Notes: a model not told the origin generated them from the letters alone. Positions 17,061 through 51,402 are shown, counted from the first letter of the stretch. The stretch: 64,000 bases of DNA from Macrostomum lignano (GCA_002269645.1 NIVC01000411.1:1-64000), one strand, 5' to 3'. Translations and numbers: made by a program.

Positions 17061-17064
<4 letters not shown>

Positions 17065-32759: not shown

Positions 32760-33000
32760 CTATAGGACGCGTTTTGCAATCTTGACAACGGAGCGGAGGG
32801 CCAGCGCGGTGAAGCCGGCGGTGCCCATCCAGATGGCCAATCGTAGCGGGAGGCTGTGCCGCAGGCGGCTGTGCGGCTCCAGCCAGAACTCTTCGCTGTC
32901 CGCCAGCTCCTTGGCGAGATCGCGAGCACCAGCAAATGACGACATGGCGATGAGGATCTGCCGGCCGGAGTTCAGGCTGCGCAGGCCGGCCAGACCGAAT
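32760..33000 (-). CDS. PNLDC1: PARN/PNLDC1-like nuclease, last exon (RRM-like remnant + hydrophobic C-terminal tail)
   Basis: Acceptor CCGCAG|A is phase-compatible with exon 4. FGLAGLRSLNSGRQILIAMSSF...LAIWMGTAGFTALALRSVVKIAKRVL*. Confidence 0.7.
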
Positions 33001-33039
33001 CTGCGGCGGACAGGGTTCGATTCTGAGGGTTAAAAACTA

Positions 33040-34260
33040 TTCACACAACTCCATACCATTCGCACAATTCCCTGACCTCCAGACTATTCCCTGAACATTC
33101 ACACAATTCCTTGACTATTCACACAATTCCCTGACCACTCACACAATTCCCTGATGATTCACACAATTTCCTGACCACATTCACACAATTTCCTGACCAC
33201 ATTCACACAATTTCCTGACCACTCACACAATTCCCTGATGATTCACACAATTTCCTGACCACATTCACACAATTTCCTGACCACATTCACACAATTTCCT
33301 GACCAATCACACAATTCACTAACCATTTGTCCAATTAACTAACCATACACACAATTCACTAACCATACATACAATTCTCTGACTATTCACACAATTCACT
33401 AACCATTTGTCCAATTCACTAACCATTCACACAGTTCACTAACCATTCACACAATTCACTAACCATACATACAATTAACTAACTATTCACACAATTCATT
33501 AACCATTTACAAAATTCACTAACCATTCACACAATTCACTAACCATACATACAATTAACTAACTGTTCACACAATTCATTAACCATTTACAAAATTCACT
33601 AACCATTCACACAATTCACTAACCATTCACACAATTCACTAACCATACATACAATTAACTAACTATTCACACAATTCATTAACCATTTACAAAATTCACT
33701 AACCATTCACACAATTCACTAACCATTCACACAATTCACTAACCATACATACAATTAACTAACTATTCACACAATTCATTAACTATTCACACAATTCATT
33801 AACCATTTACAAAATTCACTAACCATTCACACAATTCACTAACCACACATACAATTAACTAACTATTCACACAATTCATTTACCATTTACAAAATTCACT
33901 AACCATTTACACAATTCACTAACCATTCACACAATTCACTAACCATACATACAATTAACTAACTATTCACACAATTCATTAAACATTTACAAAATTCACT
34001 AACCATTCACACAATTCACTAACCATACATACAATTAACTAACTATTCACACAATTCATTAACTATTCACACAGTTCACTAACCATTCACACAATTCACT
34101 AACCATTTACACAATTCACTAACCATTCACACAATTCACTAACCATACATACAATTAACTAACTATTCACACAATTCATTTACCATTTACAAAATTCACT
34201 AACCATTTACAAAATTCACTAACCATTTACACAATTCACTAACCATTCACACAATTCACT
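33040..34260 (+). repeat. 20-bp minisatellite (CACAATTCACTAACCATTCA) filling an intron
   Basis: Direct reading; variant units recur in 80-100 bp blocks. Confidence 0.95.
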
Positions 34261-34295
34261 GCCTATCTAATCCCCATCAAAATAGCAAAGCTCAC

Positions 34296-34491
34296 ATAGC
34301 CACCAGATCCCTAACCCAGAGCAGATCGATGGGGCCGCCGTCCCACCTGCGCAGCACGAGAACGGGCGGCCGGCGCGACTTGGGATCGGGCGCGTCCAGC
34401 TTCACGCAGTGTTGCTTGGCTTTGATGAGGTTGACGCAGTTCGCCCGGCTCTCCAGCACTCGCCTGTAGGCGGCAAAGCTTGGACGACGGA
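34296..34491 (-). CDS. PNLDC1: PARN/PNLDC1-like nuclease, exon 4
   Basis: Acceptor CGCAG|TC (phase 1), donor AT|GTGAG (phase 2). NCVNLIKAKQHCVKLDAPDP resembles the PARN segment after the nuclease domain. Confidence 0.7.
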
Positions 34492-34570
34492 CTGCGAAAG
34501 GCATTCGAGAGAAGGTGTTTATATTGGATAGTTAAGTTTATAATATTTTCGAATTTCGAAATCTTTCCGG

Positions 34571-35700
34571 GGGTAGCTAGATTAAGCGCGCCAGGAACAA
34601 GCGCGCATTTTCGCACATATTTTACATGGTTCGGAATAAGCGCGCAGGAGAACGGACCAAAATCAGAATAAGCGCGCAGTATTTTTGATCGATACAGGAA
34701 AAAGCGCGCAGGGTAAAATTTTACCCGCTTTCAGAATGAGCGCGCAGCTGCTTTTGTACTGACGGGATTAAGCGCGCAAATGATGATTTTAACTGACTGA
34801 CTGCAGGGGCCTGAAATTTTCAAAGGGCATGGGCCTTTAGGCTCAATATCTGACTGACTAGCCACAGTTGGCTCTCTCGGCTTCTGATTGGCTGCAGGGG
34901 AGAGGGGTGCAATGTACAGTGCCCAGCGCATGGAGCGTGCAAATCAGGTTGTGCGCCTGATATGACTTACATTTTCAATTGCGGCGTTTAAAAGCCGATT
35001 ACACTGCGATCAAATTATTCAGTGTTACTTCTAGCTATGGAGTGCATAGAAGGAAACCTTCGCGGTTCAAAACTTTTTGTAAAGGACGAATTCGTCTATC
35101 GAAAAGACAGTGGCAGAGATAGAAGCAAAGTCGGTTTCCGCTGCTGCGACAAACACTGTCCTGGTCGCCTACTGCAGCGTACTGAAGCAGCCGGCTCTGG
35201 ACTCTCAGCCTGTCTCGTATCAGCAGCTCCAGCCGGCTCTGGACTCTCAGCCTGTCTCGTATCAGCAGCTCAAGCCGGCTCTGGACTCTCAGCCTGTCTC
35301 GTATCAGCAGCTCCAGCCGGCTCTGGACTCTCAGCCTGTCTCGTATCAGCAGCTCAAGCCGGCTCTGGACTCTCAGCCTGTCTCGTATCAGCAGCTCCAG
35401 CCGGCTCTGGACTCTCAGCTTTTAGCAATTTTAACTTTGTAACCTTGCTTCGTCTTAAATACATAGTTTAAATTCGACTTTAATCTTAGTTCTGTTGAAA
35501 ATCTGTGCGCGCTTATTCCAGGACTTTTAAAAAACGTTGCGCGCTCTTTCCTGTACCTAGGAATGTGGATGCGCGCTTATTACAGTATTTTGATATATCG
35601 CAGCGCGCTTATTCCAACATTTTTCCCTGCGCGCTTATTCCGACGTGTGCAAAAATATACACGTGCGCGCTTATTCCTGGCGCGATTAATCAGCCCTCCC
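34571..35700 (+). mobile_element. Non-autonomous MULE-like DNA transposon with long repeat-rich TIRs and a FLYWCH remnant
   Basis: Termini GGG..GATTAA.CGCGCCAGG are inverted; ATAAGCGCGCA motifs repeat in inverted orientation at both ends. Direct repeat CTTTCCGG at 34563-70 and 35701-08 (8-bp TSD). Internal ORF LFVKDEFVYRKD......FRCCDKHCPGRL. Confidence 0.75.
35186..35420 (+). repeat. 42-bp in-frame minisatellite inside the MULE-like element
   Basis: CAGCCGGCTCTGGACTCTCAGCCTGTCTCGTATCAGCAGCTC, about 5.5 copies. Confidence 0.93.
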
Positions 35701-35774
35701 CTTTCCGGATATAGCTTGGAGATTCCCAACAAGCTTTAGAGATTCTGGGGTAGCATGGAAATTCTTATGTAGCT

Positions 35775-36115
35775 TCAGAAATCCTGGGTAGCTTAGGGAT
35801 TCCTATGTAGCTTGGGGATTCCTGTATAGCTTGGGGATTCCTGTATAGCTTGGGGATTCCTGTATAGCTTGGGGATTCCTGTATAGCTTGGGGATTCCTG
35901 TATAGCTTGGGGATTCCTGTATAGCTTGGGGATTCCTGTATAGCTTGGGGATTCCTGTATAGCTTGGGGATTCCTGTATAGCTTGGGGATTCCTGTATAG
36001 CTTGGGGATTCCTGTATAGCTTGGGGATTCCTGTATAGCTTGGGGATTCCTGTATAGCTTGGGGATTCCTGTATAGCTTGGGGACTCCTATGTAGCTTGG
36101 GGATTCCTGGGAATC
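35775..36115 (+). repeat. 19-bp minisatellite (GTATAGCTTGGGGATTCCT)
   Basis: Starts ~25 bp from the exon 3 donor. Confidence 0.95.
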
Positions 36116-36134
36116 CTGAGTCCTGAAAGCTCAC

Positions 36135-36717
36135 CAAACTCGACTCCTCCGCTGTCGCTGCTGACCGCAGAAACCGCAGTGGCAGGAGGCCTCAGGCTGA
36201 GCAGCAGCATCCGATGCGACACGCGCAGGAACACCTCCCCGGCCATGAAGGCGTCCCAACCGGCCCGGTGCGCGGCCGCCCACGAGCCGCCGCCGCCGCC
36301 CCCACTGGTCGCTGAGGACTCGGCCAGGCCCAGCTGCCTGATTGTCGGCGCCGAGCCCGCGCCGCCGGCGGCGTCCAAAGCCGTCAGAGCGTCGCGCGCC
36401 TCCTCCAGCGAGCCGATAGGCAGCGAATTGAATTTACACGCGCTGCGAAACTCGTACAGCAGGTGCTTCGTGTCCCACACTAGCGGGGTCAGCCGGTGGA
36501 AACTCTCCGCTTTCCAAGCCTCGTAGTCAACTGGCAGCGGCCTGTAGAAGTACTCGTACATGGCCAGCAAGTCTAGGAAGCAGTTGTGCCCGACCAGCGG
36601 CTTGCGCAGGTTCACCAGGGCGCGGAACACCCGCGAGAAGCCGACGCAGCGGAGCGCAAACGATTCGGTCTCGGCGACATCGTCTGAGGCGCCGACAACG
36701 GCGGCCGAGGTGGAATC
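36135..36717 (-). CDS. PNLDC1: PARN/PNLDC1-like nuclease, exon 3 (CAF1/DEDDh C-terminal half)
   Basis: LVGHNCFLDLL..Y.YFY.PLP, WDTKHL, HRAGWDAFMAG; donor G|GTGAG. The acceptor could alternatively lie 24 nt further upstream. Confidence 0.85.
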
Positions 36718-36814
36718 CTGCTTTGAAGCGATTGATGATACCTTTGTTTGTAGAATCTTTAATAGCATCAGACTAATTGAACTTATATTGTGCTTATATA
36801 CTAATATAACTTAT

Positions 36815-37021
36815 ATCCAAGGACTCGGGGGTCGCTACACACAGCCTCAATTACCCCAGCTACTGCTGGTAACCCTTTTTACAGCTGGGTGAACTGAAGC
36901 AATGCAGAGTTAAGTGTCCGACCGCAGCTCATGGACACAAATTATTCCGAGTGGATCGAGAATCGAACCCCCGACCTTTCAGTCGCGGGTTCGACACTTT
37001 AACCTCTAGGCTACAAGCCCT
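36815..37021 (-). mobile_element. tRNA-derived SINE copy
   Basis: Box A TAGCCTAGAGG, box B GGTTCGATTC, and the shared central domain. Confidence 0.8.
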
Positions 37022-37439
37022 GGTCCTAGGTGAAAAAGTGTCCTAGTGTCACTAGCGTCGCCCCAGAGTATCTGAGTCGTGCCAGGGTCGCTGTAGAATC
37101 ACGGAGTTGCGTCTAAAGCGCATCTGCGTCACATTGTGAATCAGAATCGTATTTCGCATTTATTACACAACTCTTTTTAGTCTACTTGAGTCAGTAGACA
37201 GTTAAGCGCTAGTGACTCAACAGTCGCTTCTCCATCATCTCTACAGTTGTTTGAGCGTTAAAAGGTCACAAGAGTGGTTCCAGAATCGCTAGAGTCACTA
37301 GTGAGTTGTTTGCAATGACTTTCAGCGATTCTTGTCACCGTAACGTTTTCAACGGGTTGCGTAGGTGTCACAGGGTGCCTTATTAATAACGGTTGCTTTG
37401 AGTCCTAGCATGTCATTTACTGTTTCCCTGTGTTCTCTT

Positions 37440-37810
37440 TCTCACTCTCTCCTCCAATTCCCAGCTCCCCCATTTTCCATTTCACTCTCCTCCCGAATTC
37501 CCAGCTCCCCCATTTTCCATCTCACTCTCCTCCCGAATTCCCAGCTCCCCCATTTTCCATCTCACTCTCCTCCCGAATTCCCAGCTCCCCCATTTTCCAT
37601 CTCACTCTCCTCCCGAATTCCCAGCTCCCCCATTTTCCATCTCACTCTCCTCCCGAATTCCCAGCTCCCCCATTTTCCATCTCACTCTCCTCCCGAATTC
37701 CCAGCTCCCCCATTTTCCATCTCACTCTCCTCCCGAATTCCCAGCTTCCCCATTTTCCATCTCACTCTCCTCCCGAATTCCCGGCTCCCCCATTTTCCAT
37801 CTCACTCTAC
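37440..37810 (+). repeat. 40-bp minisatellite (CTCACTCTCCTCCCGAATTCCCAGCTCCCCCATTTTCCAT) followed by a CT-rich tract
   Basis: Direct reading. Confidence 0.95.
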
Positions 37811-38197
37811 CTCTCCCCTTTTCCCTCTATTCCCCTTCTCTCTCTCCCAATCTCTATTTTCTCTCCCTCTCCCTCTCTTTTTCTCTCCCTCTCCCTCTCT
37901 TTTTCTCTCCCTCTCCCTCTTCCTCTTCTCTCCCACTCCCTCTCTCTCTTTTCTCTCCCACACTCTCTCCCTTTCCCTCTACCTTTCCCCCTCTCTCCCT
38001 CTTACTCTAACCCCCCGATCCCTCTACCTCTACTCCAGTATTTAACGTATTTTCGCTACATGTTCGTAGTTGATTCTATAGTAGCTTAATGTGAATTACT
38101 TAATTTACACAACATATCGGCAGTTAGCCTACACACAGACGAGATTTAAAGGACAACTCAGAGCAGTAATTATAACTAGCTCTTCGTAGCTAATCAC

Positions 38198-38471
38198 CTG
38201 ACGCTGGCGCACCACCCATAGCACGCATCCGTCTGGCTGAATCGTGTCGGCAGCGGCAGCTTCAGCTCTGCAGTAGCCATCGCCAGTCTGTCCCAGGTTG
38301 CCACCAACGGGCGGCTCGCAGCGCAGCAGCAGCTGGCAGCCATCGGCCGGCCGTTGTAGGCGAGCGGCCAGGGCCACCCGAACGCCTAACGAGCTGACGC
38401 AGCCGATGCGGCGGACAGGGATTCGAACCTCGGCAGACGGGTCCGGGGCGGCCGACAGCAGGTTGGAGATC
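38198..38471 (-). CDS. PNLDC1: PARN/PNLDC1-like nuclease, exon 2
   Basis: GC-rich open frame. Acceptor TTAG|G (phase 2) matches exon 1; donor CAG|GTGATT (phase 0) matches exon 3. Confidence 0.65.
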
Positions 38472-38639
38472 CTAACGCGGTTGAGCGGATATATTTTTAG
38501 TTGCTTTGACTATATTTAGAGCTTGATTGGCATTTAAGTAGCTTAGAGAGTTGAATGTGCTTCGAGATTAAAGAGGCTTTAAGATTTTTAAATAAAGGGT
38601 TTTGAAGAGCTTTGGGATTCTCTGGTCCCAGAGAAAACG

Positions 38640-39145
38640 GTAGATTAGGGATTTGGAAGGATTGAGAATATACAGGTAGATTAGGGAGTTGGGGGACTAG
38701 GAATACACAGGTAGATTAGGGAATTGGGGGATTAGGAATACATAAGTAGATTAGGGAGTTGAGGGATTAGGAATATACGGGTAGATTAGGGAATTGGGGG
38801 ATTAGGAATACATAAGTAGATTAGGGAGTTGGGGGACTAGGAATACACAGGTAGATTAGGGAGTTGAGGGATTAGGAATTTACGGGTAGATTAGGGAGTT
38901 GAGGGATTAGGAATTTACGGGTAGATTAGGGAGCTGAGGGATTAGGAATTTACGGGTAGATTAGGGAGCTGAGGGATTAGGAATTTACGGGTAGATTAGG
39001 GAGCTGAGGGATTAGGAATTTACGGGTAGATTAGGGAGCTGAGGGATTAGGAATTTACGGGTAGATTAGGGAGTTGAGGGATTAGGAATTTACGGGTAGA
39101 TTAGGGAGTTGAGGGATTAGGAATACACAGGTAGATTAGGGAGTT
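38640..39145 (+). repeat. ~34-bp minisatellite (GGTAGATTAGGGAGTTGAGGGATTAGGAATTTACG)
   Basis: Direct reading. Confidence 0.92.
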
Positions 39146-39179
39146 AGATCCCAGGGAATTAAGAAGACTAAGACCTCAC

Positions 39180-39703
39180 CTCTCAGCCTCGGCAGCCAGT
39201 TCGCATTCATCAGCGGCGCCAAGCGGTTCAACGCCGGTGCCGCCAGAGCCACCGCCGGCATTCAATAGACGCCGAAGCTGCGCCTCCTGCGCCTCATTCA
39301 AATAGTACACGCCGCAGTCCACCACCCGGTTCAGGTCCAGGCCGTGGCGCCTCAGGAACTCCAGGCTGGCCGCGGTGCAGACGAACTCCCTGCCCAGCGG
39401 CTCGAACGTGGCCGGATACAGCGGGACATTGAACACGCGAGCCTCCCACTGATTGTCGAAGCCGCCGCCGTCGCCGACTGAAACCCGACGGAATGCGGCC
39501 AGGCCGAATTCCAGCACGGCGCTCTGGCGCAGAGCGGCGCGGCACTTGGCGTAGCGCTCGGCGGGGGTGTCGAAGAAGCTTCGCCTGGCCGAGGCCGTCT
39601 CGATGCCCGTGTACTCGCCGTCTATGGCGACAAAGTCGGCCGAAGAGATCGAGTCCAGAATGGTTGCCAGGTCGGATTCGAAACTCTGCCGGGTCACCTC
39701 CAT
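39180..39703 (-). CDS. PNLDC1: PARN/PNLDC1-like nuclease, exon 1 (CAF1 N-terminal half)
   Basis: MEVTRQSF..., ADFVAIDGEYTG (ExoI), FDTPAERY, FGLAAF, SLEFL..HGLDLN...GVYYL; donor AG|GTGAG. Confidence 0.88.
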
Positions 39704-40315: not shown

Positions 40316-40563
40316 ACTTAACAATTGAAATCTATCGTAGATTAATAGATTCCTCAATGTAAGGCTAGCATTGCATTAAAAAAGTGAACACAAACACGGT
40401 AGAAAATTTAATCGCAGCTATTTCGCGCACACAGCAGCTAAAAGTAAAAAAGCAGCGCGATGACAGAAAAAATGCTAACAAACTTCTGACGGAGGAACCG
40501 CTCTTTATTTGAACTAATCCGGGCATCTTAATTGATTACAGAGAACTGCCAGTAAGTCATAAA

Positions 40564-40635
40564 TTATGAAGCGGCTTGTCGTTCTGTCGTCCGCTTGGTT
40601 TGGCCAGCTTGCTGAGCTGATGAAGCATCCAGTTT
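40564..40635 (-). CDS. MRPS35: Probable last coding exon of MRPS35
   Basis: Acceptor TTTGCAG| in phase 0 gives KLDASSAQQAGQTKRTTERQAAS*; AATAAA (minus strand) at 40504-09. Confidence 0.5.
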   Translation of the reverse strand, partial: KLDASSAQQAGQTKRTTERQAAS

Positions 40636-40664
40636 CTGCAAACGATATGGTGTAGTAATTAAAA

Positions 40665-41890
40665 TGTCCATTTCTAGCTAAAGTATATGCCATTATCTCA
40701 GAATGCATTTCTAGCTAAAGAATATGCCATTATCTCAGAATGCCTTTCTAGCTAAAGAATATGGCATTATCTCAGAATGCCTTTCTAGCTAAAGAATATG
40801 CCATTATCTCAGAATGCCTTTCTAGCTAAAGAATATGGCATTATCTCAGAATGCCTTTCTAGCTAAAGAATATGGCATTATCTCAGAATGCCTTTCTAGC
40901 TAAAGAATATGGCATTATCTCAGAATGCCTTTCTAGCTAAAGAATATGGCATTATCTCAGAATGCCTTTCTAGCTAAAGAATATGCCATTATCCCAGAAA
41001 TGCCATTCCTAGCTACAGAATGTGCCATTATCCCAGAAATGCCATTCCTAGCTACAGAATGTGCCATTATCCCAGAAAGAAATGCCATTCCTAGCTACAG
41101 ACATGAATGTGCCATTATCCCAGAAATGCCATTCCTAGCTACAGACATGAATGTGCCATTATCCCAGAAATGCCATTCCTAGCTACAGACAGTGAATGTG
41201 CCATTATCCCAGAAATGCCATTCCTAGCTACAGACAGTGAATGTGCCATTATCTTAGACTGCCGTTTCTTGCAACAGACACTGAATGTGCCATTATCCCA
41301 GAATACCATTTCCAGCTACAGACAGTGAATGCGCCATTATCCCAGAATACCATTTCTAGCTACAGGCACTGAATGTGCCATTATCCCAGAATGTCATTTC
41401 CAGCTACAGACACTGAATGTGCCATTATCCCAGAATACCATTTCCAGCTACAGACACTGAATGTGCCATTATCCCAGAATGCCATTTCCAGCTACAGACA
41501 CTGAATGTGCCATTATCCCAGAAATGCCATTCCTAGCTACAGAATGTGCCATTATCCCAGAAAGAAATGCCATTCCTAGCTACAGACACTGAATGTGCCA
41601 TTATCCCAGAAATGCCATTTCTAGCTACAGACACTGAATGTGCCATTATCCCAGAAATGCCATTTCTAGCTACAGACACTGAATGTGCCATTATCCCAGA
41701 AATGCCATTCCTAGCTACAGACACTGAGTGTGCCATTATCCCAGAATGCCATTTCCAGCTACAGACACTGAATGTGCCATTATCCCAGAATGCCATTTCT
41801 AGCTACAGACACTGAATGCGCCATTATCCCAGAATGCCATTTCTTGCTACAGACACTGAATGTGCCATTATCCCAGAATGCCATTCCTTG
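40665..41890 (+). repeat. 39-45 bp minisatellite with a unit gradient (GCCATTATCCCAGAAATGCCATTCCTAGCTACAGACACTGAATGT)
   Basis: Fills an MRPS35 intron; the unit changes progressively along the array. Confidence 0.95.
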
Positions 41891-41913
41891 CAAGAGACAC
41901 GATCATAACCAAC

Positions 41914-42367
41914 CTTAACAGGGCCGCCACCGCCGCCGCCTCCACCCTTGCCGATTCCCAGCAGGAACTCAACAGCCCGGCCGTACTGCCGCAGACTGTC
42001 GTGAGTCTCTCCAGTGCCGCCATTCTCCGGCTGCCTATGCAGTTTAATCAGCGCATTGCGATAGTGAGTCACAGCATTAGTCGCGGGTTTGTTAGCCAGT
42101 TTGGCCAGCTTCTTCTGGCTCGAACTGCCGTCAAATTCGTAGCGTTGATTGTCGATCCAGGCTTTGCCGGACTCCCAAGACTCGTGGCGCAGCGACTGGC
42201 TGTACAGAGCCGACAGGGCATAAATCAGATAGTCGTAGTTCTGGAAGCGCCAAGGACACCGGTCTGACCACATGCGCAGGTGGCGGACCCGGGAGGAGCC
42301 AACAAACTGTGTGTCCACTTTGGCAAAGTTGGAGAAGCTCACCAGACAGAGCAGCTTCTCGAGGGAT
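41914..42367 (-). CDS. MRPS35: Mitochondrial ribosomal protein S35, exon 2
   Basis: Acceptor CCAG|A (phase 2) gives RSLEKLLCLV. SDRCPWRFQNYDY..Y.L..LY..S...ESWE matches the MRPS35 family. Confidence 0.88.
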
Positions 42368-42414
42368 CTGGATTGGGGAGGGGTGATGGCACAGTTGGTT
42401 TAAATAGTTGATTC

Positions 42415-42850
42415 TAGTGCCATTGTGGCATTGGGGGAATCAGTGTCATTGTGGCATTGGGGGGGGGGAATCATAGTGCCATAGTGGCATTGGGGGGAAT
42501 CATAGTGTCATTGTAGCATTGGGGGGGGGAATCATAGTGCCATAGTGGCATTGGGGGGAATCATAGTGTCATTGTAGCATTGGGGGGGGAATCATAGTGC
42601 CATAGTGGCATTGGGGGGAATCATAGTGTCATTGTAGCATTAGGGGAATCATAGTGCATTGTGGCATTGGGGGAATCATAGTGTATTGTAGCATTAGGGG
42701 AATCATAGTGCATTGTGGCATTGGGGGAATCATAGTGCATTGTGGCATTAGGGGAATCATAGTGCATTGTGGCATTAGGGGGATCATAGTGTATTGTGGC
42801 ATTAGGGGAATCGGGAATCATAGTGATATTGTGACATTAGGGGAATCGGG
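42415..42850 (+). repeat. ~27-bp minisatellite (CATAGTGCATTGTGGCATTGGGGGAAT)
   Basis: Direct reading. Confidence 0.92.
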
Positions 42851-43051
42851 AATTCATTCCCCTAATCGCCAATAAATAAAAAACTAAGGTTGTTTTTTTA
42901 TTTTCAATATTCAAGATATTAAAAGATACCGTACGGGTTTATATGATCCTTAATTTTTCCTCAAAAAGCGTTACTTTCTACTGTTTGTCAGTAGACGATC
43001 TCTCACAAACAGTCATAAAATAAAATATCCCATCAGAAATGAACAAGAAAC

Positions 43052-43809
43052 CTTTTATCCAGTTTCACAAGCCGGTCAAGGCAGAGGCTGAGGTCAACCC
43101 GCCGAGCCCGAATATCGCGGATGCTGTGATGCGAGCGCAGGTAATCCGTAGTGACCACTCGCAACGGCAGCTGCTTATCAATAACGCCGGGCTCGTCAAG
43201 CGCCTTCGGCCAAGGAGTGCACAGGTGCTTAATAGCGGCGCAGTGAGCTGCCACGTGAGCCGGCGTCAGGTGTAGAAAATTGGGCACCTTAATCAGCTCC
43301 GTGTTGCCCCATTTATTCGGCGATATGCCCGCATTCTCCGTGGCATTGTTGGGCCGGCCCTGGCGCACCGGCAGCGGCACCGCGGCCGGATGGAAGGTGC
43401 GCGCCGTCGGCCAGACGCTCGGCCAGCTGCTGTGCGCCGGCTTCATCCGGCCGCAGCGCGGCGTCAGCGGGTGCCGGCTGCGAAGGAGCGGCGGCTTTGC
43501 TGCCTCCTTGGTGAGGCCGGGCACCACCAGGGAGCGAAAGCCGGCGGTATTGGAGGCAGCGGCAGCGGCGGCCACGTCAGCCGCGGAGTAGCCGGCAAAT
43601 CCGGCGCGTCGGGAGCTGGCGCCGCGGCGCCCCGACACTGAGGCAGCTCCGGCGTCGTCGACGCCGCCTTCGCCGATGCTCCAGACGTCGGAGGAGTTCG
43701 ACGAAGATGAATTCGAATAGCCGGCGGCTGCCAGGCTGTGGTTGCTAGGGGCGGCTAGCAACCGCCTGGCCAAGCCGGACAGGAGCAGCAGTTTGCCGGT
43801 TGGCGTCAT
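43052..43809 (-). CDS. MRPS35: Mitochondrial ribosomal protein S35, exon 1
   Basis: ATG at 43809 (MTPTGKLLLLSGLARRLL, targeting-peptide-like). WPSVWPTARTFHPAAVPLPVRQG, NTELIKVPNFLHLTP....HC.AIK.LCT.WP; donor AG|GTTTCT. Confidence 0.9.
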
Positions 43810-43899
43810 GCCATGCAGTGCAAAGCGGCAACGTAGTTTTTGGATGCCTGCGTTGAAGAATTCTAGTCTGCTGTTGTTCCTCAAAATATTACAGAAAGG

Positions 43900-44192
43900 C
43901 AGTCAGACTGACAGGCAGGCAGACAGACAGACAGACTGACAGACAGACAGACAGAGACAGACAGACTGACAGACAGACAGACAAACTGACAGACAGGCAG
44001 ACAGACAGCCATACGGACAGACAGACAGACAGACAGACAGATATACGGACAGACAGACAGACAGATAGACAGACAGGCAGGCAGAAAGACAGACAGACAG
44101 CCATACGAACAGACGGACAGACAGACAGACAGGCAGAGAGACAGACAGGCAGGCAGGCAGGCAGAAAGACAGACAGACAGACAGCCATACGG

Positions 44193-44224
<32 letters not shown>

Positions 44225-44287
44225 GCAGAAAGACACACAGACAGACAGATATACGGACAGACAGACAGACAGGCAGAAAGACAGACA

Positions 44288-44320
<33 letters not shown>

Positions 44321-44372
44321 AAAGACAGACAGACAGGCAGGCAGGCAGAGCGACAGACAGACAGACAGACAA
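43900..44372 (+). repeat. (GACA/GGCA)n microsatellite
   Basis: Direct reading. Confidence 0.95.
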
Positions 44373-44944
44373 TTCTAAAAGTGCACCTGGGGGGAAGACA
44401 AACAGCTGTACAGTGAAACGGTCTGTTTTGAATACAGCCTGAGCTGAAATGAAGTCAGTCATAAACAAATGCTCAGTTTCACCGATTAGAGAGAGATCAA
44501 TGCCATGTTTAGCATGAACCCCGCCAATAAGACGCATTTATTTTTCCATAATTAAAAGCAAAGGTGTGAAGACAGCAAAGTACAATTATGACAGGAAAAA
44601 ACACTAGGTTCAATTACAATACTAAGCTAATAAATGGACCAACGGATAGTTAGGAAACATAAGGGACTTTCTAGATTTAACTGAAACTCACTGTAAAGTA
44701 TTTTTGCAAGGAGCACATGCATATATTAATTACTCGTAGCTATTTTTTACGCACGCGGAAACTTAAGAAAGCATGCTGACAACATGACAAAAGAATAACA
44801 AAGTATTAATAACCATGATTGATTTAAACAAACTAAGCTATTCAATAACAAAACAGGAGCATGCAGAATGACAAGCAGTTATCATGTGAGGGTTTGTAAC
44901 ACTGTTACTGAACTAGACAAATACAGTGACTTAACTTTTTTGGG

Positions 44945-46215
44945 CTGACTCTCATTGTGACTGAGGGCGATTTTCATTGCGGCAGAGGGCGATTCTCATT
45001 GTGGCCGAGGGCGATTCTCATTGTGGCTGAGGGCGATTCTCATTGTGGCTGAGGGCGATTCTCATTGTGGCTGAGGGCGATTCTCATTGTGGTTGTGGGC
45101 GATTCTCATTGTGGCTGAGGGCGATTCTCATTGTGGTTGAGGGCGATTCTCATTGTGGCTGAGGGCGATTCTCATTGTGGTTGAGGGCGATTCTCATTGT
45201 GGTTGAGGGCGATTCTCATTGTGGCTGAGGGCGATTCTCATTGTGGCTGAGGGCGATTCTCATTGTGGTTGAGGGCGATTCTCATTGTGGCTGAGGGCGA
45301 TTCTTATTGTGGTTGAGGGCGATTCTCACTGTGGTTGAGGGCAATTCTTATTGTGGCTGAGGGCGATTCTTATTGTGGTTGAGGGTGATTGTCATAGTGG
45401 TTGAGGGCGATTCTTATTGTGGCTGAGGGCGATTCTCATTGTGGTTGAGGGCGATTCTCACTGTGGTTGAGGGCGATTCTTATTGTGGCTGAGGGCGATT
45501 CTTATTGTGGTTGAGGGTGATTGTCATAGTGGTTGAGGGCGATTCTTATTGTGGCTGAGGGCGATTCTCATTGTGGTTGAGGGCGATTCTCACTGTGGTT
45601 GAGGGCGATTCTTATTGTGGCTGAGGGCGATTCTTATTGTGGTTGAGGGTGATTGTCATAGTGGTTGAGGGCGATTCTTATTGTGGCTGAGGGCGATTCT
45701 CATTGTGGTTGAGGGCGATTCTCACTGTGGTTGAGGGCGATTCTTATTGTGGCTGAGGGCGATTCTTATTGTGGTTGAGGGTGATTGTCATAGTGGTTGA
45801 GGGCGATTCTTATTGTGGCTGAGGGCGATTCTCATTGTGGCTGAGGGCGATTCTCATAGCTGAGGGCGATTCTCATTGTGGTTGAGGGCGATTCTTATTG
45901 TGGTTGAGGGCGATTCTCATGGTTGAGGGCGATTCTCAAAGTGGCTGAGGGCGATTTTCATTGTGGTTGAGGGCGATTCTCACTGTGGCTGAGGGCGATT
46001 CTCATTGTGGCCGAGGGCGATTCTCATTGTGGCTGAGGGCGATTTTCATTGTGACTGAGGGCGATTTTCATTGTGACTGAGGGCGATTTTCATTTTGGTT
46101 GAGGGCGATTCTTACTGTGGTTGAGGGCGATTCTTATTGTGGCTGAGGGCGATTCTCACTGTGACTGAGGGCGATTCTCATGGCTAAGAGCAATTTTCAT
46201 TGTGACTGAGGTCGA
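44945..46215 (+). repeat. 22-bp minisatellite (TGTGGCTGAGGGCGATTCTCAT) with a 132-bp higher-order repeat
   Basis: The variant GTGATTGTCATAG recurs every 132 bp, four times. Confidence 0.95.
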
Positions 46216-46596
46216 TTCCTGAGGTGAATGAGAGCGATTTTAAAGATAAGGGGTTGATACTTAAAATGACTGGGGTGATTCTCAATGTGAATCCTTATTC
46301 TAAAGATGACTGACTAAAGGCGATTCTCAAGATGTACGCGTAGACGAAAGAGTTGCATTCTGCAATCGCACGCACATTTATTTGGATAATTCCAGGTAAA
46401 ACTAAAAGCGATCAGAAGGCGACTTTCAGCATTGTTATAATTCGAATTGCAAATCAAGGACGACTTAAGTAGAAGGCTGGAAAAATGGTTCTTAGAAAAG
46501 TAAACAAATAAGAAGTTGTCAAGCGCTCTAAGAAACGATCTTCCTCCTGTACTTCTACTCAAGCCGTCTCTCTGTTTCAAACTGCCCCAGCATCCC

Positions 46597-46992
46597 CTAC
46601 AACTGAGACTGAGTGTGAAATCCCAAGCCAAACATGGAGGTGACAAAGGTGGAGAACAGGGACCAGAACAGGCCGTAGCTGAGCAATCCGCCGGCTGTCT
46701 GAGGCGAAGCCAACGATCTGAGCTCGTCAACTCGGCTAGTAAGATCGGCCACTAGTGGATCATCTGTGTAGGCTTTCAGCCAATCAGGCAGGGCGTTCCA
46801 CGTGGACGTATTTGATTGGCTGGTAGAATTGGCCCTGGCCAGATTATACAGAGGCAGGTGGCCGGACAGTCTGCCAGAGTCCCAGCTGCAGCCGGACAGG
46901 GTCTTGTACATCAGGGCCAGGAACAGCGTGACAGCCAGCGGGCACAGGTACTGCAGAGATATCACGCCAAGGAACCGGTTCACGTTGGACAC
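46597..46992 (-). CDS. TMEM161: TMEM161 family protein, last exon
   Basis: VSNVNRFLGVISLQYLCPL..TLFLALMYKTL, ...GLFWSLF..F.TSMFGL.FH; acceptor TGCAG|. Confidence 0.88.
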   Translation of the reverse strand: MSNVNRFLGVISLQYLCPLAVTLFLALMYKTLSGCSWDSGRLSGHLPLYNLARANSTSQSNTSTWNALPDWLKAYTDDPLVADLTSRVDELRSLASPQTAGGLLSYGLFWSLFSTFVTSMFGLGFHTQSQL

Positions 46993-47059
46993 CTGCAACA
47001 ATAGTGTGAAAAGTTTCTGGCGTTGAATAGGATGCTGAATACTCTACTTTTAGTAATAA

Positions 47060-47270
47060 AACTTATGGCCTAGTGGTTAGAGCGTCGGACTCACGACTTG
47101 GAGGTCGGGGGTTCGATTCCCTATCCTACAGAAACAAATAGTGTGTCCTTGAGGAAGATTCTGCACTTAACTCTGCATTGCTTCAGTTCACCCAGCTGTA
47201 AAATGGGTGCCGCATTAGCTGGGCCGGGGTAATTGAGGGTTTTTGTGGCGAGTCTGGCGACCCCCCCCCC
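47060..47270 (+). mobile_element. tRNA-derived SINE copy
   Basis: Box A TGGCCTAGTGG, box B GGTTCGATTCC, and the central domain. Confidence 0.8.
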
Positions 47271-47447
47271 ACGTGATGCAGCCGCCTCTCCCAGTTGCAT
47301 TACAGTAGTTTAGGTAGTTAAAAAGTCGCAAGAGTCGACTCAGAAACGTTAGAGTCACTAATGAGTTGTTTGTAATGGCTCTAGCGATTCAGGAGTCAGC
47401 GGAATGAGATAATCTCGTAAATTCAACAGGCCGCCTACAGCCCCTAC

Positions 47448-47591
47448 CTGCTCCTGCAAATCCCGATTGCTAATCCGTCCGGCCTCGCGATTCAGTCTGG
47501 CCAATCGAGTCGAAGCCGAGTGCAGAAACGCCTGCAGATGGCCGGGCATGCAGACCAGACGGAGCAGGCACAGCAGCAGCACGGCGTACAC
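47448..47591 (-). CDS. TMEM161: TMEM161, internal exon
   Basis: LLCLLRLVCMPGHLQAFL..A..R...L.REAGRIS..DLQ (family motif); phase 0 at both ends. Confidence 0.88.
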
Positions 47592-47654
47592 CTGATGAGC
47601 AAAGGCGAATCAAGACTCAAATTGGTGATCATTTTCAAAATTTCATTAAATACG

Positions 47655-47735
47655 AGCTATGTAGCCTAGAGGTTAGAGCGTCGGGCTTACGATGAAAAAA
47701 TTTCTGGGGTTCGATTCTTGACTCAATTGGCAAAC
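47655..47735 (+). mobile_element. SINE head fragment
   Basis: TAGCCTAGAGGTTAGAGCG...GGTTCGATTCT. Confidence 0.6.
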
Positions 47736-47809
47736 AGCCTCTTCAACAGGTGGCACCGCATGACAGTGGACATCATATTGTGACTAATTCCGATTTGATT
47801 TCGGGCCAT

Positions 47810-48058
47810 TAATAATAATAATAATAATAATAATTGATTACACCTGCTCCTATTGGACCAGATGTGCAACCGACAGCTCAGCCGCAGCTATTGCGCAGCG
47901 CATCTGAAGGCTGCGTACGGCTGTTCAGTCCAAGGACTGGGGGTTGCCACAAAAAAACACCGTCAATTACCCCAGATAATTGCTGGTTGTCTTGCTCAAG
48001 GACACAAATTGTTCCAGTGGGGTCGGGAATCGAACCCCCCTAATCACTAGGCTACATG
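47810..48058 (-). mobile_element. tRNA-derived SINE copy with an internal deletion and (ATT)n tail
   Basis: Head TAGCCTAGTG...GGTTCGATTCC; 3' GCAGGTGTAATC followed by (ATT)n. Confidence 0.8.
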
Positions 48059-48086
48059 CTAATTAATAACGAAGACAAAAACCAAC

Positions 48087-48749
48087 CTGCACGGTGCACA
48101 AATCCACCGCCGTGATGCCGCGACGCACGGGAACAAACCAGGTGAGCAGACAGCCCAGCGGAGCATAGAAACTAAGATGATGCAGCAGCAGGGTCAGCCG
48201 CCGACTCATCGTGTCCATCAGTCCGGCGGCCGAGTCCGTCTCCAGACAGGCGGTGTCCGGACTAACCAGATCCCAGTACACTCGCGAATGTCGAATAGCC
48301 GAGAAAGTGACCAAGGCTCCATAGAACCCGCCAATCAGTACTAAACAAGCTCGGAGCACCTGGTTATCTGACAGAGGCGGCGAGTCCAGCCCCAGCTGCA
48401 GCACTGTGGGCGGCAGCACCAGCACGCCCATAGACATGACCGTGTAGAAAAATGCAAATGTAACCAACAGTACAAACTCGGACGCATTAGCGGAGTACAG
48501 GCGAACAATGGATAGCAAGCCTTTGAGAGCAAAGCCAACGCCAAGGCAGCACCACACTAGGGACAGATTGGTTCTGTCACTTTTGCCGCCATTCAATGCT
48601 CCGTAGTAGAACTCCGTGATGCCGTACACAATGCAGGCAATCAGGCTGAAGTCCAGCAGCCACTGCCAGTCCGAGTAAAAGTGCAAATCTCGCAGGTCCA
48701 GCTCAGTCTGTCGGGTGCTCACCAGCGGGATGCGAATCGATTTGGCCAC
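48087..48749 (-). CDS. TMEM161: TMEM161, large internal exon
   Basis: DL..LHFYSDWQWLLDFS, NLSLVWC, hydrophobic helices, HHLSFYAPL..LL.W..PV; splice sites CAG|GTG and CAG|GTTGGT. Confidence 0.9.
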
Positions 48750-48784
48750 CTGGAGCAGCGAGTGCAGGGAATTCTTTAGAAACA

Positions 48785-49450
48785 TGTCCAGTTTGAGCTG
48801 GCCTACTCCCAACTCCCCCTTCAGAGGCCTGTCTGTCCAGTTTGAGCTGGCCTTCTCCCAACTCCTCCTTCAGAGGCCTGCCTGTCCATTTTGAGCTGGC
48901 CTTCTCCCAACTCCTCCTTCAGAGGCCTGTCTGTCCATTTTGAGCTGGCCTTCTCCCAACTCCTCCTTCAGAGGCCTGTCTGTCCAGTTTGAGTTGGCCT
49001 TCTCCCAACTCCTCCTTCAGAGGCCTGCCTGTCCATTTTGAGTTGGCCTTCTCCCAACTCCTCCTTCAGAGGCCTGCCTGTCCATTTTGAGTTGGCCTTC
49101 TCCCAACTCCTCCTTCAGAGGCCTGTCTGTCCATTTTGAGCTGGCCTTCTCCCAACTCCTCCTTCAGAGGCCTGTCTGTCCAGTTTGAGCTGGCCTTCTC
49201 CCAACTCCTCCTTCAGAGGCCTGTCTGTCCAGTTTGAGTTGGCCTTCTCCCAACTCCTCCTTCAGAGGCCTGCCTGTCCATTTTGAGCTGGCCTTCTCCC
49301 AACTCCTCCTTCAGAGGCCTGTCTGTCCAGTTTGAGCTGGCCTTCTCCCAACTCCTCCTTCAGAGGCCTGCCTGTCCATTTTGAGTTGGCCTTCTCCCAA
49401 CTCCTCCTCCAGAGGCCTGTCTGTCCAGTTTGAGTTGGCCTTCTCCCAAA
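48785..49450 (+). repeat. 49-bp minisatellite (GTCCAGTTTGAGCTGGCCTTCTCCCAACTCCTCCTTCAGAGGCCTGTCT)
   Basis: Fills a TMEM161 intron almost completely. Confidence 0.95.
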
Positions 49451-49479
49451 CCCTCCTTCTTCTCTCATGCTCAACCCAC

Positions 49480-49671
49480 CAGAAAGATTCCATCTCGATC
49501 TGTTTTCGGCGACTTTTTAATATTAGCCGCCTCCGCTATTGTCCGATCGCTGGGCGGTTTGAAACGGCGCAACGATAGTAGCACACGGCGGCCGAGCGAG
49601 TAGTGCCGGCTGATGGTGGACAGCACCGACGCTGACACCAGGGTGACGACCAGCTGGAAGCCAAACACAGC
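49480..49671 (-). CDS. TMEM161: TMEM161, N-terminal conserved exon (no ATG of its own)
   Basis: AAG|GCT GTG TTT GGC gives AVFGFQLVVTLVSAS, the TMEM161 N-terminus; donor CTG|GTGGGT. Confidence 0.85.
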
Positions 49672-49834
49672 CTTCAATGCGGGCGGACGGGGAGGAATGC
49701 AATTGAGGAGCGATTAGTAGACGGAAATTAAAAAATGATCTACGTCTAGCTAGTCAAATATAAAAATTAAAGCATTGTCGAAGGTAACCTAAGAACAGAC
49801 TGAAGATCTGTGAAGGTGGCGAGTCGCGACCCAA

Positions 49835-50745
49835 CACCTGAGTTTCTGGAAGGGTGGATGGAGGCTCAACACCTGAGTATCTGGGAGTGGTGGATGGAGG
49901 CTCAACACCTGAGTATCTGGGAGTGGTGGATGGAGGCTCAACACCTGAGTATCTGGGAGTGGCGGGTGGGGGCTCAACACCTAAGGATCTGGGAGTGGTG
50001 GATGGGGCTCAACACCTGAGGATCTGAGAGTGGCGGGTGGGGGCTCGGCACCTGAGGATGTGGGAGGATGGCAGCTCAACACCTGAGTATCTGGGAGTGG
50101 TAGATGGAGGCTCAACACCTGAGTATCTGGGAGTGGCGGGTGGGGGCTCGGCACCTGAGTATCTGGGAGTGGCGGGTGGGGGCTCGGCACCTGAGGATCT
50201 GGGAGTGGCGGGTGGGGGCTCGGCACCTGAGGATCTGGGAGTGGCGGGTGGGGGCTCAGCACCTGAGGATCTGGGAGTGGCGGGAGGGGGCTCAGCACCT
50301 GAGGATCTGGGAGTGGCGAGTGGGGGCTCAGCACCTGAGGATCTGGGAGTGGCGGGTGGGGGCTCAACACCTGAGGATCTGAGAGTGGCGGGTGGGGGCT
50401 CGGCACCTGAGGATGTGGGAGGATGGCAGCTCAACACCTGAGTATCTGGGAGTGGTAGATGGAGGCTCAACACCTGAGTATCTGGGAGTGGCGGGTGGGA
50501 GCTCGGCACCTGAGTATCTGGGAGTGGCGGGTGGGGGCTCGGCACCTGAGGATCTGGGAGTGGCGGGTGGGGGCTCAGCACCTGAGGATCTGGGAGTGGC
50601 GGGAGGGGGCTCAGCACCTGAGGATCTGGGAGTGGCGAGTGGGGGCTCAGCACCTGAGGATCTGGGAGTGGCGGGTGGGGGCTCAGCACCTGAGGATCTG
50701 GGAGTGGCGGGAGGGGGCTCAACACCTGAGGATGTGGGAGGATGG
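49835..50745 (+). repeat. 36-bp minisatellite (GGCTCAGCACCTGAGGATCTGGGAGTGGCGGGTGGG) with a ~355-bp block duplication
   Basis: Direct reading; duplicated pseudo-ORFs start at 50037 and 50392. Confidence 0.95.
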
Positions 50746-50784
50746 CCGTTGCTGGATGGATCTGATGGGGTCTGATGGGCTTAC

Positions 50785-50844
50785 GCCACGAATATAAATT
50801 GGAATAACTCGAGTAAAAAGCTTTAAGACAAGCATTTCTTGCAT
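50785..50844 (-). CDS. TMEM161: Candidate short first exon of TMEM161
   Basis: Open frame MQEMLVLKLFTRVIPIYIRG ends at a consensus donor GGC|GTAAG in phase 0, compatible with the 49671 acceptor. Confidence 0.4.
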
Positions 50845-50985
50845 GACAGAAGACTAATTGTCTCCTAATTATATTTATTACATTTATAAGCTAAGTTCTA
50901 ACAAACTTGCACAGATTTGCACGAATCAAATATGAATATGAATTTAGTCAGACACAAGCACTAAGTAGCATCAACAGTCAGTCAT

Positions 50986-51282
50986 TTATCGAGGCCAAGG
51001 CGAAGGCCTGTTCGTTCGCATTAGAAACTTGATCTTCCTGGCCATCTCGGCGTCGTAAACCCGCTTGCAGCGCTCGTAGATGACTCGTCTGCGCCATTTG
51101 TCCGGCGTCTCGTAGTAGATCTGACTGTTGAAGGATTTAACGTAGCCGTCCTTGGATAAAATGCGTTGCAGTCCGTTGAACGACAGCTCAAGTCCGCCAT
51201 TGGCCTGGTCCATCACTTTGACGCTGCGTTGAAGGAATTTGAAGTTGCGAAAGTATTGATCGGGCGACAGGCGTCCTGCCAT
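50986..51282 (-). CDS. MRPS21: Mitochondrial ribosomal protein S21
   Basis: FKFLQRSVKV...L.RIL..DG.......YYETP...RRR..YERCKR.Y..EMARKIKFLMR.NR..PW matches MRPS21. Acceptor TTGCAG 16 nt before the ATG; AATAAA at 50874-79. Confidence 0.93.
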   Translation of the reverse strand: MAGRLSPDQYFRNFKFLQRSVKVMDQANGGLELSFNGLQRILSKDGYVKSFNSQIYYETPDKWRRRVIYERCKRVYDAEMARKIKFLMRTNRPSPWPR

Positions 51283-51402
51283 GCTTGTGCTGGATTGGCT
51301 GCAACAGTGAAATTAGCTTTAATGATTGAAATATCAAGACATTCTTTGACAGCAGGATAGGATAATGTTGCTATCATGCTATTAAAGCATCCTAAGCTCT
51401 AA

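What the first reader, a model, noticed from the sequence alone, without database searches (positions are those of the whole stretch)
32760..51298. Candidate four-gene trans-spliced operon: MRPS21 > TMEM161 > MRPS35 > PNLDC1-like
Seen: four co-oriented genes. At each of the three junctions the upstream AATAAA (50874, 46377, 40504) is followed ~53-66 nt later by an AG acceptor-like site (TTAAAG 50821, CTTTAG 46314, TTTTAG 40438), and then by a minisatellite that could lie in a first intron. This leaves no room for separate promoters. Known: flatworms and nematodes resolve polycistronic pre-mRNAs by coupled 3'-end formation and SL trans-splicing. Two mitoribosomal subunits and a probably mitochondria-anchored nuclease suggest functional clustering (inference). 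AG dinucleotides are common, so spacing alone is weak evidence.
Basis: partly seen in the sequence, partly recalled or inferred. Interest (0 to 1): 0.7.

Follow-up and report, generated by a model that had tools for sequence, protein, structure and literature searches.

The report
Flatworm four-gene candidate trans-spliced operon

Summary
The window is Macrostomum lignano scaffold NIVC01000411.1, positions 1-64000 (100% identical over 23 kb, same coordinates). The four minus-strand genes are real: MRPS21, TMEM161, MRPS35 (mS35) and a PARN-family, PNLDC1-like nuclease. My exon models reproduce the GenBank proteins exactly. However, AG occurs at 6.4% per base, so 6-7 fall within 100 nt after each hexamer.

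TMEM161 has no genomic start codon. Its first exon begins at GCT (49671), directly after an AG. That codon aligns with residue 2 of homologues that begin "MA...". The published M. lignano spliced leader ends in ATG. TMEM161 is therefore almost certainly trans-spliced at 49672, after the minisatellite, not at 50821.

The spacers measure 1202, 2567 and 800 nt, of which 906, 1758 and 612 nt are tandem repeats. The non-repeat remainders (296, 809, 188 nt) pass the published <1 kb operon criterion for this species.

Trans-splicing of MRPS35 and the nuclease, and a single promoter, could not be tested because no reads were available.

The parts
50986..51282 (-). MRPS21 (bS21m) single-exon CDS, 98 aa plus stop. 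The GenBank model is 5'-partial ('SMAGRL...'), so its transcript start lies at 51285-51287, which is not preceded by AG.
   Evidence: Pfam PF01165; the exact 99-aa protein is on record on two scaffolds; tblastn
50874..50879 (-). AATAAA poly(A) signal of MRPS21; it ends 112 nt after the stop codon.
   Evidence: identical in paralog L001
50821..50822 (-). It has a weak polypyrimidine tract (35th percentile) and is not supported as the TMEM161 5' end.
   Evidence: the annotated TMEM161 mRNA starts 1150 nt further downstream
49835..50740 (.). 36-nt minisatellite (25.5 copies) in the MRPS21>TMEM161 spacer. It lies upstream of the TMEM161 trans-splice site, so it is spacer (outron), not intron.
49672..49673 (-). 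Inferred SL trans-splice acceptor AG of TMEM161 (tccccgtccgcccgcattgaAG|GCT). The exon starts at 49671 with codon 2 (Ala).
46597..49671 (-). TMEM161 gene. Exons: 49671-49480, 48749-48087, 47591-47448, 46992-46597. It encodes 464 aa without an initiator Met (PAA83691.1, 'partial'). Intron 1 holds a 49-nt minisatellite at 48785-49459.
   Evidence: the exon model reproduces P0002 exactly; Pfam PF10268, E 9e-87
46377..46382 (-). AATAAA poly(A) signal of TMEM161; it ends 220 nt after the stop codon.
43810..46376 (-). TMEM161>MRPS35 spacer (2567 nt). It holds a 22-nt minisatellite (44942-46218), a unique AT-rich 570 nt (44372-44941) with a further AATAAA at 44542-44537, and (CTGT)n at 43891-44371.
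40564..43809 (-). MRPS35 (mS35) gene. Exons: 43809-43052, 42367-41914, 40635-40564; 427 aa. Intron 2 holds a 1.2-kb minisatellite (40663-41900).
   Evidence: the exon model reproduces P0113 exactly; mS35 homologues at E about 1e-50, PF10213. The GenBank versions are 5'-truncated inside the CDS.
40504..40509 (-). AATAAA poly(A) signal of MRPS35; it ends 60 nt after the stop codon.
   Evidence: also present in L001
39702..40315 (.). 23/26-nt minisatellite filling most of the MRPS35>nuclease spacer and running into the ATG. Each unit carries a CCCTCAG acceptor-like site.
32760..39703 (-). PARN-family, PNLDC1-like nuclease gene. Exons: 39703-39180, 38471-38198, 36717-36135, 34491-34296, 33000-32760; 605 aa, complete (PAA83689.1). 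The CAF1 domain covers residues 3-429. No PARN RNA-binding domain is detected. A C-terminal hydrophobic segment spans residues 580-598.

Best explanation
This is a cluster of four co-oriented conserved genes in Macrostomum lignano. It has the organisation that the species' own literature calls an operon with repeat-inflated intercistronic spacers.

Proposed mechanism:
1. Transcription starts just upstream of MRPS21, which has a very short 5' UTR and does not appear to be trans-spliced.
2. Each upstream mRNA is cleaved and polyadenylated at its AATAAA.
3. Each downstream mRNA is capped by trans-splicing of the single 35-nt SL (...TTGCATG) at an acceptor next to its coding start, downstream of the minisatellite.

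For TMEM161 the acceptor is the AG at 49673-49672, and the SL's terminal AUG serves as the start codon. That step is close to shown from sequence. Trans-splicing of MRPS35 and the PNLDC1-like gene, and read-through transcription across the three spacers, are inferred.

My estimates: TMEM161 trans-spliced, about 0.9. MRPS21-TMEM161 co-transcribed, about 0.6. MRPS35-nuclease co-transcribed, about 0.5. All four genes in one unit, about 0.35-0.4.
For: - Identity of the window: 100% identical over 23,075 nt to GCA_002269645.1 NIVC01000411.1, at the same coordinates.
- Species biology: one SL, CGGTCTCTTACTGCGAAGACTCAATTTATTGCATG. About 30% of genes are trans-spliced and about 15% are in operons. Repeats inflate operon spacers, the repeat-adjusted distance peaks near 100 bp, and the operon threshold is 1 kb. 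18% of operons start with a gene that is not trans-spliced (PMC8629364).
- TMEM161:
  - The GenBank CDS is 5'-partial and begins at AVFGFQ (49671), right after an AG, in both paralogous copies.
  - An in-frame TAA lies 45 nt upstream with no ATG in between, and the spacer holds no ATG followed by a GT donor.
  - Pfam profile position 1 aligns to this residue.
  - 38 homologue alignments reach query residue 1. In 29 of them it pairs with the homologue's residue 2, and 27 of those 29 proteins begin 'MA[VIL][FLM]...'.
  - All flatworm SLs end in ATG, which can serve as a start codon (PMC12582326).
- Spacers: non-repeat lengths are 296, 809 and 188 nt. No opposite-strand gene is annotated between the four genes, and the ORFs there lie in tandem repeats.
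- The same gene order is present in the paralogous copy NIVC01000103.1.
Against: - No SL-containing reads, CAGE/RAMPAGE data or junction-spanning RNA could be examined.
- The raw spacers are long (0.8-2.6 kb).
- The 163 nt upstream of the TMEM161 acceptor and the 570-nt unique AT-rich block before MRPS35 could each hold a promoter.
- About 60% of trans-spliced M. lignano genes are not in operons.
- The GenBank MRPS35 models begin inside the CDS, at different bases in the two copies. No trans-splice boundary was therefore recorded for it.
- No candidate acceptor between (CTGT)n and the MRPS35 ATG puts the SL AUG in frame.
- The four genes carry different name prefixes (Mlig015014, Mlig022886, Mlig023704). 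That may mean they were assembled as separate transcriptional units. The naming rule in PMC5730564 is not explicit enough to be sure.
- Synteny between the two copies carries no weight, because the unique sequence checked at junction 1 is about 95-98% identical, indicating a recent duplication.
Confidence: 0.55

Rival explanations
1. The four genes are independent transcription units that only happen to be neighbours. Each downstream gene has its own promoter inside the spacer. TMEM161, and perhaps others, is trans-spliced as a monocistronic transcript with a short outron.
For: - Spacers of 1202, 2567 and 800 nt.
- A T/A-rich stretch (ttaatttttatatttgac) lies about 90 nt upstream of the TMEM161 acceptor.
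- 570 nt of unique sequence at 35% GC lie in the second spacer.
- Most trans-spliced genes of this species are not operonic.
- The MRPS35 models have imprecise 5' ends.
Against: - 69-77% of each spacer is tandem repeat. After subtracting repeats, all three fall in the short-distance mode that the species' literature assigns to operons.
- No promoter evidence of any kind could be obtained. The only promoter scan available is for bacterial promoters and is irrelevant here.
Confidence: 0.3
2. There are two two-gene operons, MRPS21>TMEM161 and MRPS35>nuclease. They are separated by a promoter in the long second spacer.
For: - The second spacer is the longest (2567 nt raw, 809 nt non-repeat).
- It holds the only sizeable unique block.
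- It has an extra AATAAA at 44542-44537 that could end a longer TMEM161 3' UTR.
- The first and third spacers leave only 296 and 188 nt of non-repeat sequence.
Against: 809 nt is still below the published 1-kb threshold. There is no direct evidence for a start site there.
Confidence: 0.2
3. SL acceptors lie 53-66 nt after each AATAAA (50821, 46314, 40438), and the minisatellites are removed as first introns.
For: - Donor-like sites precede two of the arrays: GTAAGC at 50784 and GTTAAG at about 40327.
- A 36-nt mini-exon (50820-50785) would be in frame with the SL AUG and TMEM161 exon 1 (my reading).
- The 40438 site has a strong polypyrimidine tract, at the 99th percentile.
Against: - The AGs are at chance density.
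- The TMEM161 CDS is 5'-partial from 49671 in both copies. A mini-exon would have extended the open frame.
- The extra 12 residues are absent from the start of 27 homologues examined, and the Pfam profile starts at the Ala.
- The complete nuclease CDS needs the in-frame stop at 39829-39827. At least 124 nt of the array are therefore exonic in the annotation.
- The 50821 site has a weak polypyrimidine tract.
Confidence: 0.07

Closest known systems
Macrostomum lignano SL trans-spliced operons (Wudarski et al. 2017, PMC5730564; Ustyantsev & Berezikov 2021, PMC8629364)
   Same: Same species and same genome assembly. The genes are co-oriented and conserved, at least one downstream gene is trans-spliced, repeats fill the intercistronic spacers, the repeat-adjusted distances are below 1 kb, and the first gene is apparently not trans-spliced.
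   Different: Only one of the three downstream genes can be shown, indirectly, to use the SL. I found no text naming this particular cluster: the gene IDs occur in no indexed paper or held supplement.
Flatworm spliced leaders that donate the initiator AUG (Cheng et al. 2006, as cited in PMC12582326)
   Same: The SL ends in AUG. The TMEM161 exon starts at codon 2, in phase, so the leader's AUG completes the conserved N-terminus 'MAVFG...'.
   Different: This is shown here by sequence and homology only, not by cDNA or translation assays. For MRPS35 and the nuclease the SL AUG would instead open a short or overlapping upstream reading frame.
Caenorhabditis elegans SL2-type operons (my own knowledge: Blumenthal & Gleason 2003)
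   Same: 3'-end formation of the upstream gene would be coupled to trans-splicing of the downstream gene. Such operons are enriched for mitochondrial and housekeeping genes.
   Different: There is no specialised SL2-like leader in M. lignano. Raw spacers are 0.8-2.6 kb rather than about 100 nt, and they are swollen by minisatellites.

Membership tests
M. lignano operon (operational definition of PMC8629364) | The locus lies in a genome that uses SL trans-splicing. | tested here: met
   The window is 100% identical to M. lignano NIVC01000411.1. The SL is described in PMC8629364.
M. lignano operon (operational definition of PMC8629364) | Adjacent genes are on the same strand and not interrupted by an opposite-strand gene. 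| tested here: met
   Four minus-strand gene models are consecutive in the annotation. Plus-strand ORFs in the spacers lie in tandem repeats.
M. lignano operon (operational definition of PMC8629364) | The repeat-adjusted intergenic distance is below 1000 bp. | tested here: met
   296, 809 and 188 nt remain after subtracting TRF arrays. Measured from the AATAAA to the next coding start, so these are slight over-estimates.
M. lignano operon (operational definition of PMC8629364) | The downstream gene is SL trans-spliced: TMEM161. | tested here: met
   Indirect but strong. There is no genomic ATG, the exon starts at codon 2 after an AG, both paralogous models begin at the same base, and homologues start with 'MA'. 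No reads were seen.
M. lignano operon (operational definition of PMC8629364) | The downstream gene is SL trans-spliced: MRPS35 and the PNLDC1-like gene. | tested here: inconclusive
   Both have their own ATG. The MRPS35 models are 5'-truncated at different bases. Candidate acceptors exist, but none is singled out. No transcript contigs are on record.
Operon in the strict sense (one promoter, polycistronic pre-mRNA) | A single transcription start and RNA spanning the junctions. | not testable with these tools
   No RNA-seq, RAMPAGE or long-read data could be reached. The literature notes that assembled units break in repeat-rich spacers.
C. elegans-type SL2 operon | Intercistronic distance of about 100 nt and a specialised downstream leader. 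| tested here: not met
   Raw spacers are 800-2567 nt. M. lignano has a single SL (PMC8629364).
PNLDC1 (PARN-like domain-containing 1, pre-piRNA trimmer) | A CAF1/PARN-type nuclease domain without PARN's RNA-binding domain, plus a C-terminal membrane anchor. | tested here: inconclusive
   The CAF1 domain covers residues 3-429 and the full profile. PF08675 is not detected. The best PDB matches are PARN (E about 1e-31). A hydrophobic segment spans 580-598 of 605 residues, with a Kyte-Doolittle mean of only 1.46. Orthology to PNLDC1, and any mitochondrial location, were not tested.

The most novel reading that the evidence does not exclude
The minisatellites are not just neutral filler in a working operon. 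The array upstream of the PNLDC1-like gene is a tandem amplification of the trans-splice acceptor plus the 11-nt 5' UTR, running right up to the ATG (26 units here, about 15 in the paralog). It would offer a ladder of alternative SL acceptors. Because the SL ends in AUG, each would create a different short upstream reading frame. Repeat copy number could then tune translation of an operon gene.
Probability: 0.1. Interest if true: 0.45.

Novelty: new member of a known kind. Interest (0 to 1): 0.2.

Why it matters
The finding adds little at the level of principle. SL trans-splicing, SL-donated start codons and repeat-inflated operons are all published for this species, and the locus is already annotated in GenBank.

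Its use is as a clean worked example.
- A conserved gene (TMEM161) cannot be translated without the leader's AUG.
- An intercistronic distance of 1.2 kb is 75% one minisatellite.

If junction-spanning RNA were shown, the cluster would be a convenient test locus. M. lignano is transgenic-capable, so it could be used to ask how 3'-end formation and trans-splicing stay coupled across kilobase-long repeat arrays.

Tried and rejected
- A chimeric four-gene protein query was swamped by low-complexity words. It returned one hit, which still identified the species.
- Exact-sequence look-ups for transcript-derived contigs found only the genome scaffolds. No cDNA 5' ends were available.
- The third homology search did not return the annotated nuclease. 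I recovered its model by enumerating GT-AG combinations that give 605 aa and confirming the best one by exact look-up.
- Rfam gave no hits. The SL sequence is not in the window at up to 3 mismatches, so there is no SL RNA gene here.
- The promoter/terminator scan uses bacterial consensus sequences and is irrelevant to a flatworm.
- I hoped the paralog comparison would show selective constraint at junctions. The unique sequence I aligned, at junction 1, is about 95-98% identical, so the comparison has no power.
- Gene IDs Mlig015014, Mlig022886 and Mlig012591 occur in no indexed paper or held supplement.
- I considered a cis-spliced upstream exon as the source of the TMEM161 ATG. I rejected it because the spacer has no ATG followed by a GT donor, and the homologues show no N-terminal extension.
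- I considered MRPS21 being trans-spliced at TTGCAG|CC (51299). This stays unresolved: the SL AUG would be out of frame, and the annotated 5' ends (51285-51287) do not follow an AG.


Full report
**Where the window comes from.** A protein search with the window's exons returned a Macrostomum lignano TMEM161 protein. The scaffold carrying its near-identical paralog, GCA_002269645.1 NIVC01000411.1 (range 36597-59671, reversed), is 100% identical to window 36597-59671 over 23,075 nt. The window is therefore positions 1-64000 of that scaffold in the published Mlig_3_7 assembly. A second, collinear copy of the same four genes lies on NIVC01000103.1. A third copy of MRPS21 sits at the end of NIVC01002210.1.

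**Check of the observation.** All four genes are on the minus strand.
- *MRPS21*: a single exon, 51282-50986 (Pfam PF01165).
- *TMEM161*: four exons, 49671-49480, 48749-48087, 47591-47448 and 46992-46597. This model translates exactly to GenBank PAA83691.1 and matches PF10268 at E 9e-87.
- *MRPS35 (mS35)*: three exons, 43809-43052, 42367-41914 and 40635-40564. This model translates exactly to UniRef A0A1I8GXN1. Homologues named mS35 score E about 1e-50 and carry PF10213.
- *PARN-family nuclease*: five exons, 39703-39180, 38471-38198, 36717-36135, 34491-34296 and 33000-32760. I found these by enumerating GT-AG combinations and confirmed them as exactly PAA83689.1. Its CAF1 domain covers residues 3-429. 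No PARN RNA-binding domain is detected. PARN is the best PDB match, and residues 580-598 are hydrophobic. 'PNLDC1-like' is a fair label, but orthology and mitochondrial anchoring were not tested.

The hexamers are meaningful. Only eight AATAAA occur on this strand between 32 and 52 kb, and three of them end 60-220 nt after the stop codons of the first three genes. The AG sites are not meaningful. AG occurs at 6.4% per base, so 6-7 AGs fall in the 100 nt after each hexamer. None of the three is a CAG, whereas eight of the nine cis acceptors in these genes are. Their polypyrimidine content ranks at the 35th, 74th and 99th percentile of all AGs in the region.

**What is known for this species.** M. 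lignano has one 35-nt spliced leader, CGGTCTCTTACTGCGAAGACTCAATTTATTGCATG. About 30% of its genes are trans-spliced and about 15% are assigned to operons. [quoted passage not shown] The authors therefore call an operon when the repeat-adjusted distance is under 1 kb and the downstream gene is trans-spliced. 18% of operons begin with a gene that is not trans-spliced (PMC8629364). The annotation pipeline cut transcripts at SL-read peaks and poly(A) peaks (PMC5730564). All known flatworm leaders end in ATG, which can serve as a start codon (PMC12582326).

**The one junction that sequence alone can resolve.** TMEM161 has no start codon in the genome.
- Its first exon begins at GCT (49671), immediately after tccccgtccgcccgcattgaAG.
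- The two codons upstream are TTG AAG. An in-frame TAA lies 45 nt upstream with no ATG in between.
- The whole spacer has no ATG followed by a GT donor.
- Both GenBank paralogs are '5'-partial' and begin at this same residue, AVFGFQ. As I understand TransDecoder's behaviour, this happens only if the annotated transcript starts at 49671-49673.
- The Pfam profile starts at this residue.
- In an exhaustive HMMER search, 38 alignments reach query residue 1. In 29 of them it pairs with residue 2 of the homologue, and 27 of those 29 proteins begin 'MA[VIL][FLM]...'.

Exactly one residue is therefore missing, the initiator Met, and the leader's terminal AUG supplies it in phase. That repeat is spacer (outron), not a first intron. 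It happens to be in frame, but it would add 12 residues that none of the 27 homologue N-termini I examined carries, and it would have extended the annotated open frame.

**The other junctions.**
- *MRPS21*: the annotated CDS is 'SMAGRL...' in two copies and 'STSMAGRL...' in the third. The transcript starts recorded 3-9 nt upstream of the ATG do not follow an AG. It looks like a first gene that is not trans-spliced, with a very short 5' UTR. A TTGCAG acceptor at 51299 cannot be excluded.
- *MRPS35*: the GenBank models start inside the CDS, at +9 nt in this copy and +18 nt in the paralog. These 5' ends are limited by read coverage, and no trans-splice boundary was recorded. Six AGs lie in the roughly 100 nt upstream of the ATG. 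None puts the SL AUG in frame. Those at 43863 and 43848 give 19- and 14-codon upstream frames that end in a UGA overlapping the main AUG. The one at 43908 gives a 9-codon frame that ends 71 nt upstream of the main ATG.
- *The nuclease*: the annotated CDS is complete from its own ATG. The nearest in-frame stop upstream is at 39829-39827, so the annotated transcript must include at least 124 nt of the minisatellite as 5' UTR.

**Spacers.** From each AATAAA to the next coding start there are 1202, 2567 and 800 nt. Of these, 906, 1758 and 612 nt are tandem arrays, which leaves 296, 809 and 188 nt. All three pass the published 1-kb rule. The first and third sit near the short-distance mode. The second spacer holds a unique, 35%-GC block of 570 nt with its own AATAAA at 44542-44537. 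This could be an alternative TMEM161 3' end or a promoter. The arrays sit in the same places in the paralog but are shorter there; the array before the nuclease has about 15 units against 26. The unique junction-1 sequence I aligned is about 95-98% identical between the copies. The duplication is therefore recent, and shared synteny says nothing about constraint.

**Conclusion.** The anatomy was wrong. The acceptors that matter lie next to the coding starts, and the minisatellites swell the intercistronic spacers, which is the pattern already described for this species.

From sequence, TMEM161 is shown to depend on the leader. Operon status is inferred: one promoter, RNA that spans the junctions, and SL use by genes 3 and 4. 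The cluster meets the published operational definition, but independent promoters in the spacers remain a live alternative. So does a split into two two-gene operons.

Functional clustering of two mitoribosomal proteins with a possibly membrane-anchored nuclease is suggestive only. Enrichment of mitochondrial genes in nematode operons is known (my own knowledge), and TMEM161 does not fit that theme.

Novelty is low. This is a candidate new member of a well-described class in an already annotated genome.

Noticed in passing
window 39702-40315 (minus strand); L001 19804-20153: The minisatellite before the PNLDC1-like gene ends inside the ATG. Its unit (ACCCTGCAACAAT[TC]C...CCCTCAG) contains a CAG acceptor-like site plus the 11 nt that precede the start codon, as if acceptor and 5' UTR had been tandemly amplified. 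There are 26 units here and about 15 in the paralog.
   Followed up: partly
window 44372-44941: A unique, 35%-GC block of 570 nt lies between the 22-nt minisatellite and (CTGT)n in the TMEM161>MRPS35 spacer. It has its own AATAAA at 44542-44537. It could be an alternative TMEM161 3' end or a promoter region for MRPS35. It is not repeated elsewhere in the window.
   Followed up: partly
window 51700-51410 (-), 47240-47068 (-), 47832-48039 (+), 36840-37016 (+), 30899-31132 (+): Five copies, 80-92% alike, of a SINE-like element that appears tRNA-derived. They lie upstream of MRPS21, in TMEM161 introns 2 and 3, in a nuclease intron and downstream of the cluster. ARAGORN calls no intact tRNA.
   Followed up: partly
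window 51282-51300: MRPS21 has an annotated 5' UTR of only 3-9 nt in three paralogous models. A TTGCAG acceptor-like site lies 16 nt upstream of the ATG and overlaps a CCAAT motif. It is unresolved whether the gene has a very short capped leader or is itself trans-spliced out of frame with the SL AUG.
   Followed up: partly
window 31907 (ATTAAA) and 32129-32681: The PNLDC1-like gene has no AATAAA after its stop codon (32760). The first variant signal, ATTAAA, lies 853 nt downstream, beyond a 34-nt minisatellite. Its 3' UTR may therefore also carry a repeat array.
   Followed up: no
window 13316-18530 (-), 2864-5181, 5449-5739 (+), 22753-23481 (+), 59114-63937 (-): Other content of the window:
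- a LINE-like element with reverse transcriptase, RNase H-like and ORF1-like reading frames;
- a (GATA)n array of about 580 copies;
- sulfotransferase-like ORFs on the plus strand;
- an ankyrin-repeat/protein-kinase gene on the minus strand that ends 7.8 kb upstream of MRPS21.
   Followed up: no
window 48785-49459 and 40663-41900: Introns of TMEM161 (49-nt unit, 13.8 copies) and MRPS35 (44/37-nt units, about 1.2 kb) are also largely minisatellite. Repeat arrays are therefore not specific to the intergenic junctions in this locus.
   Followed up: yes
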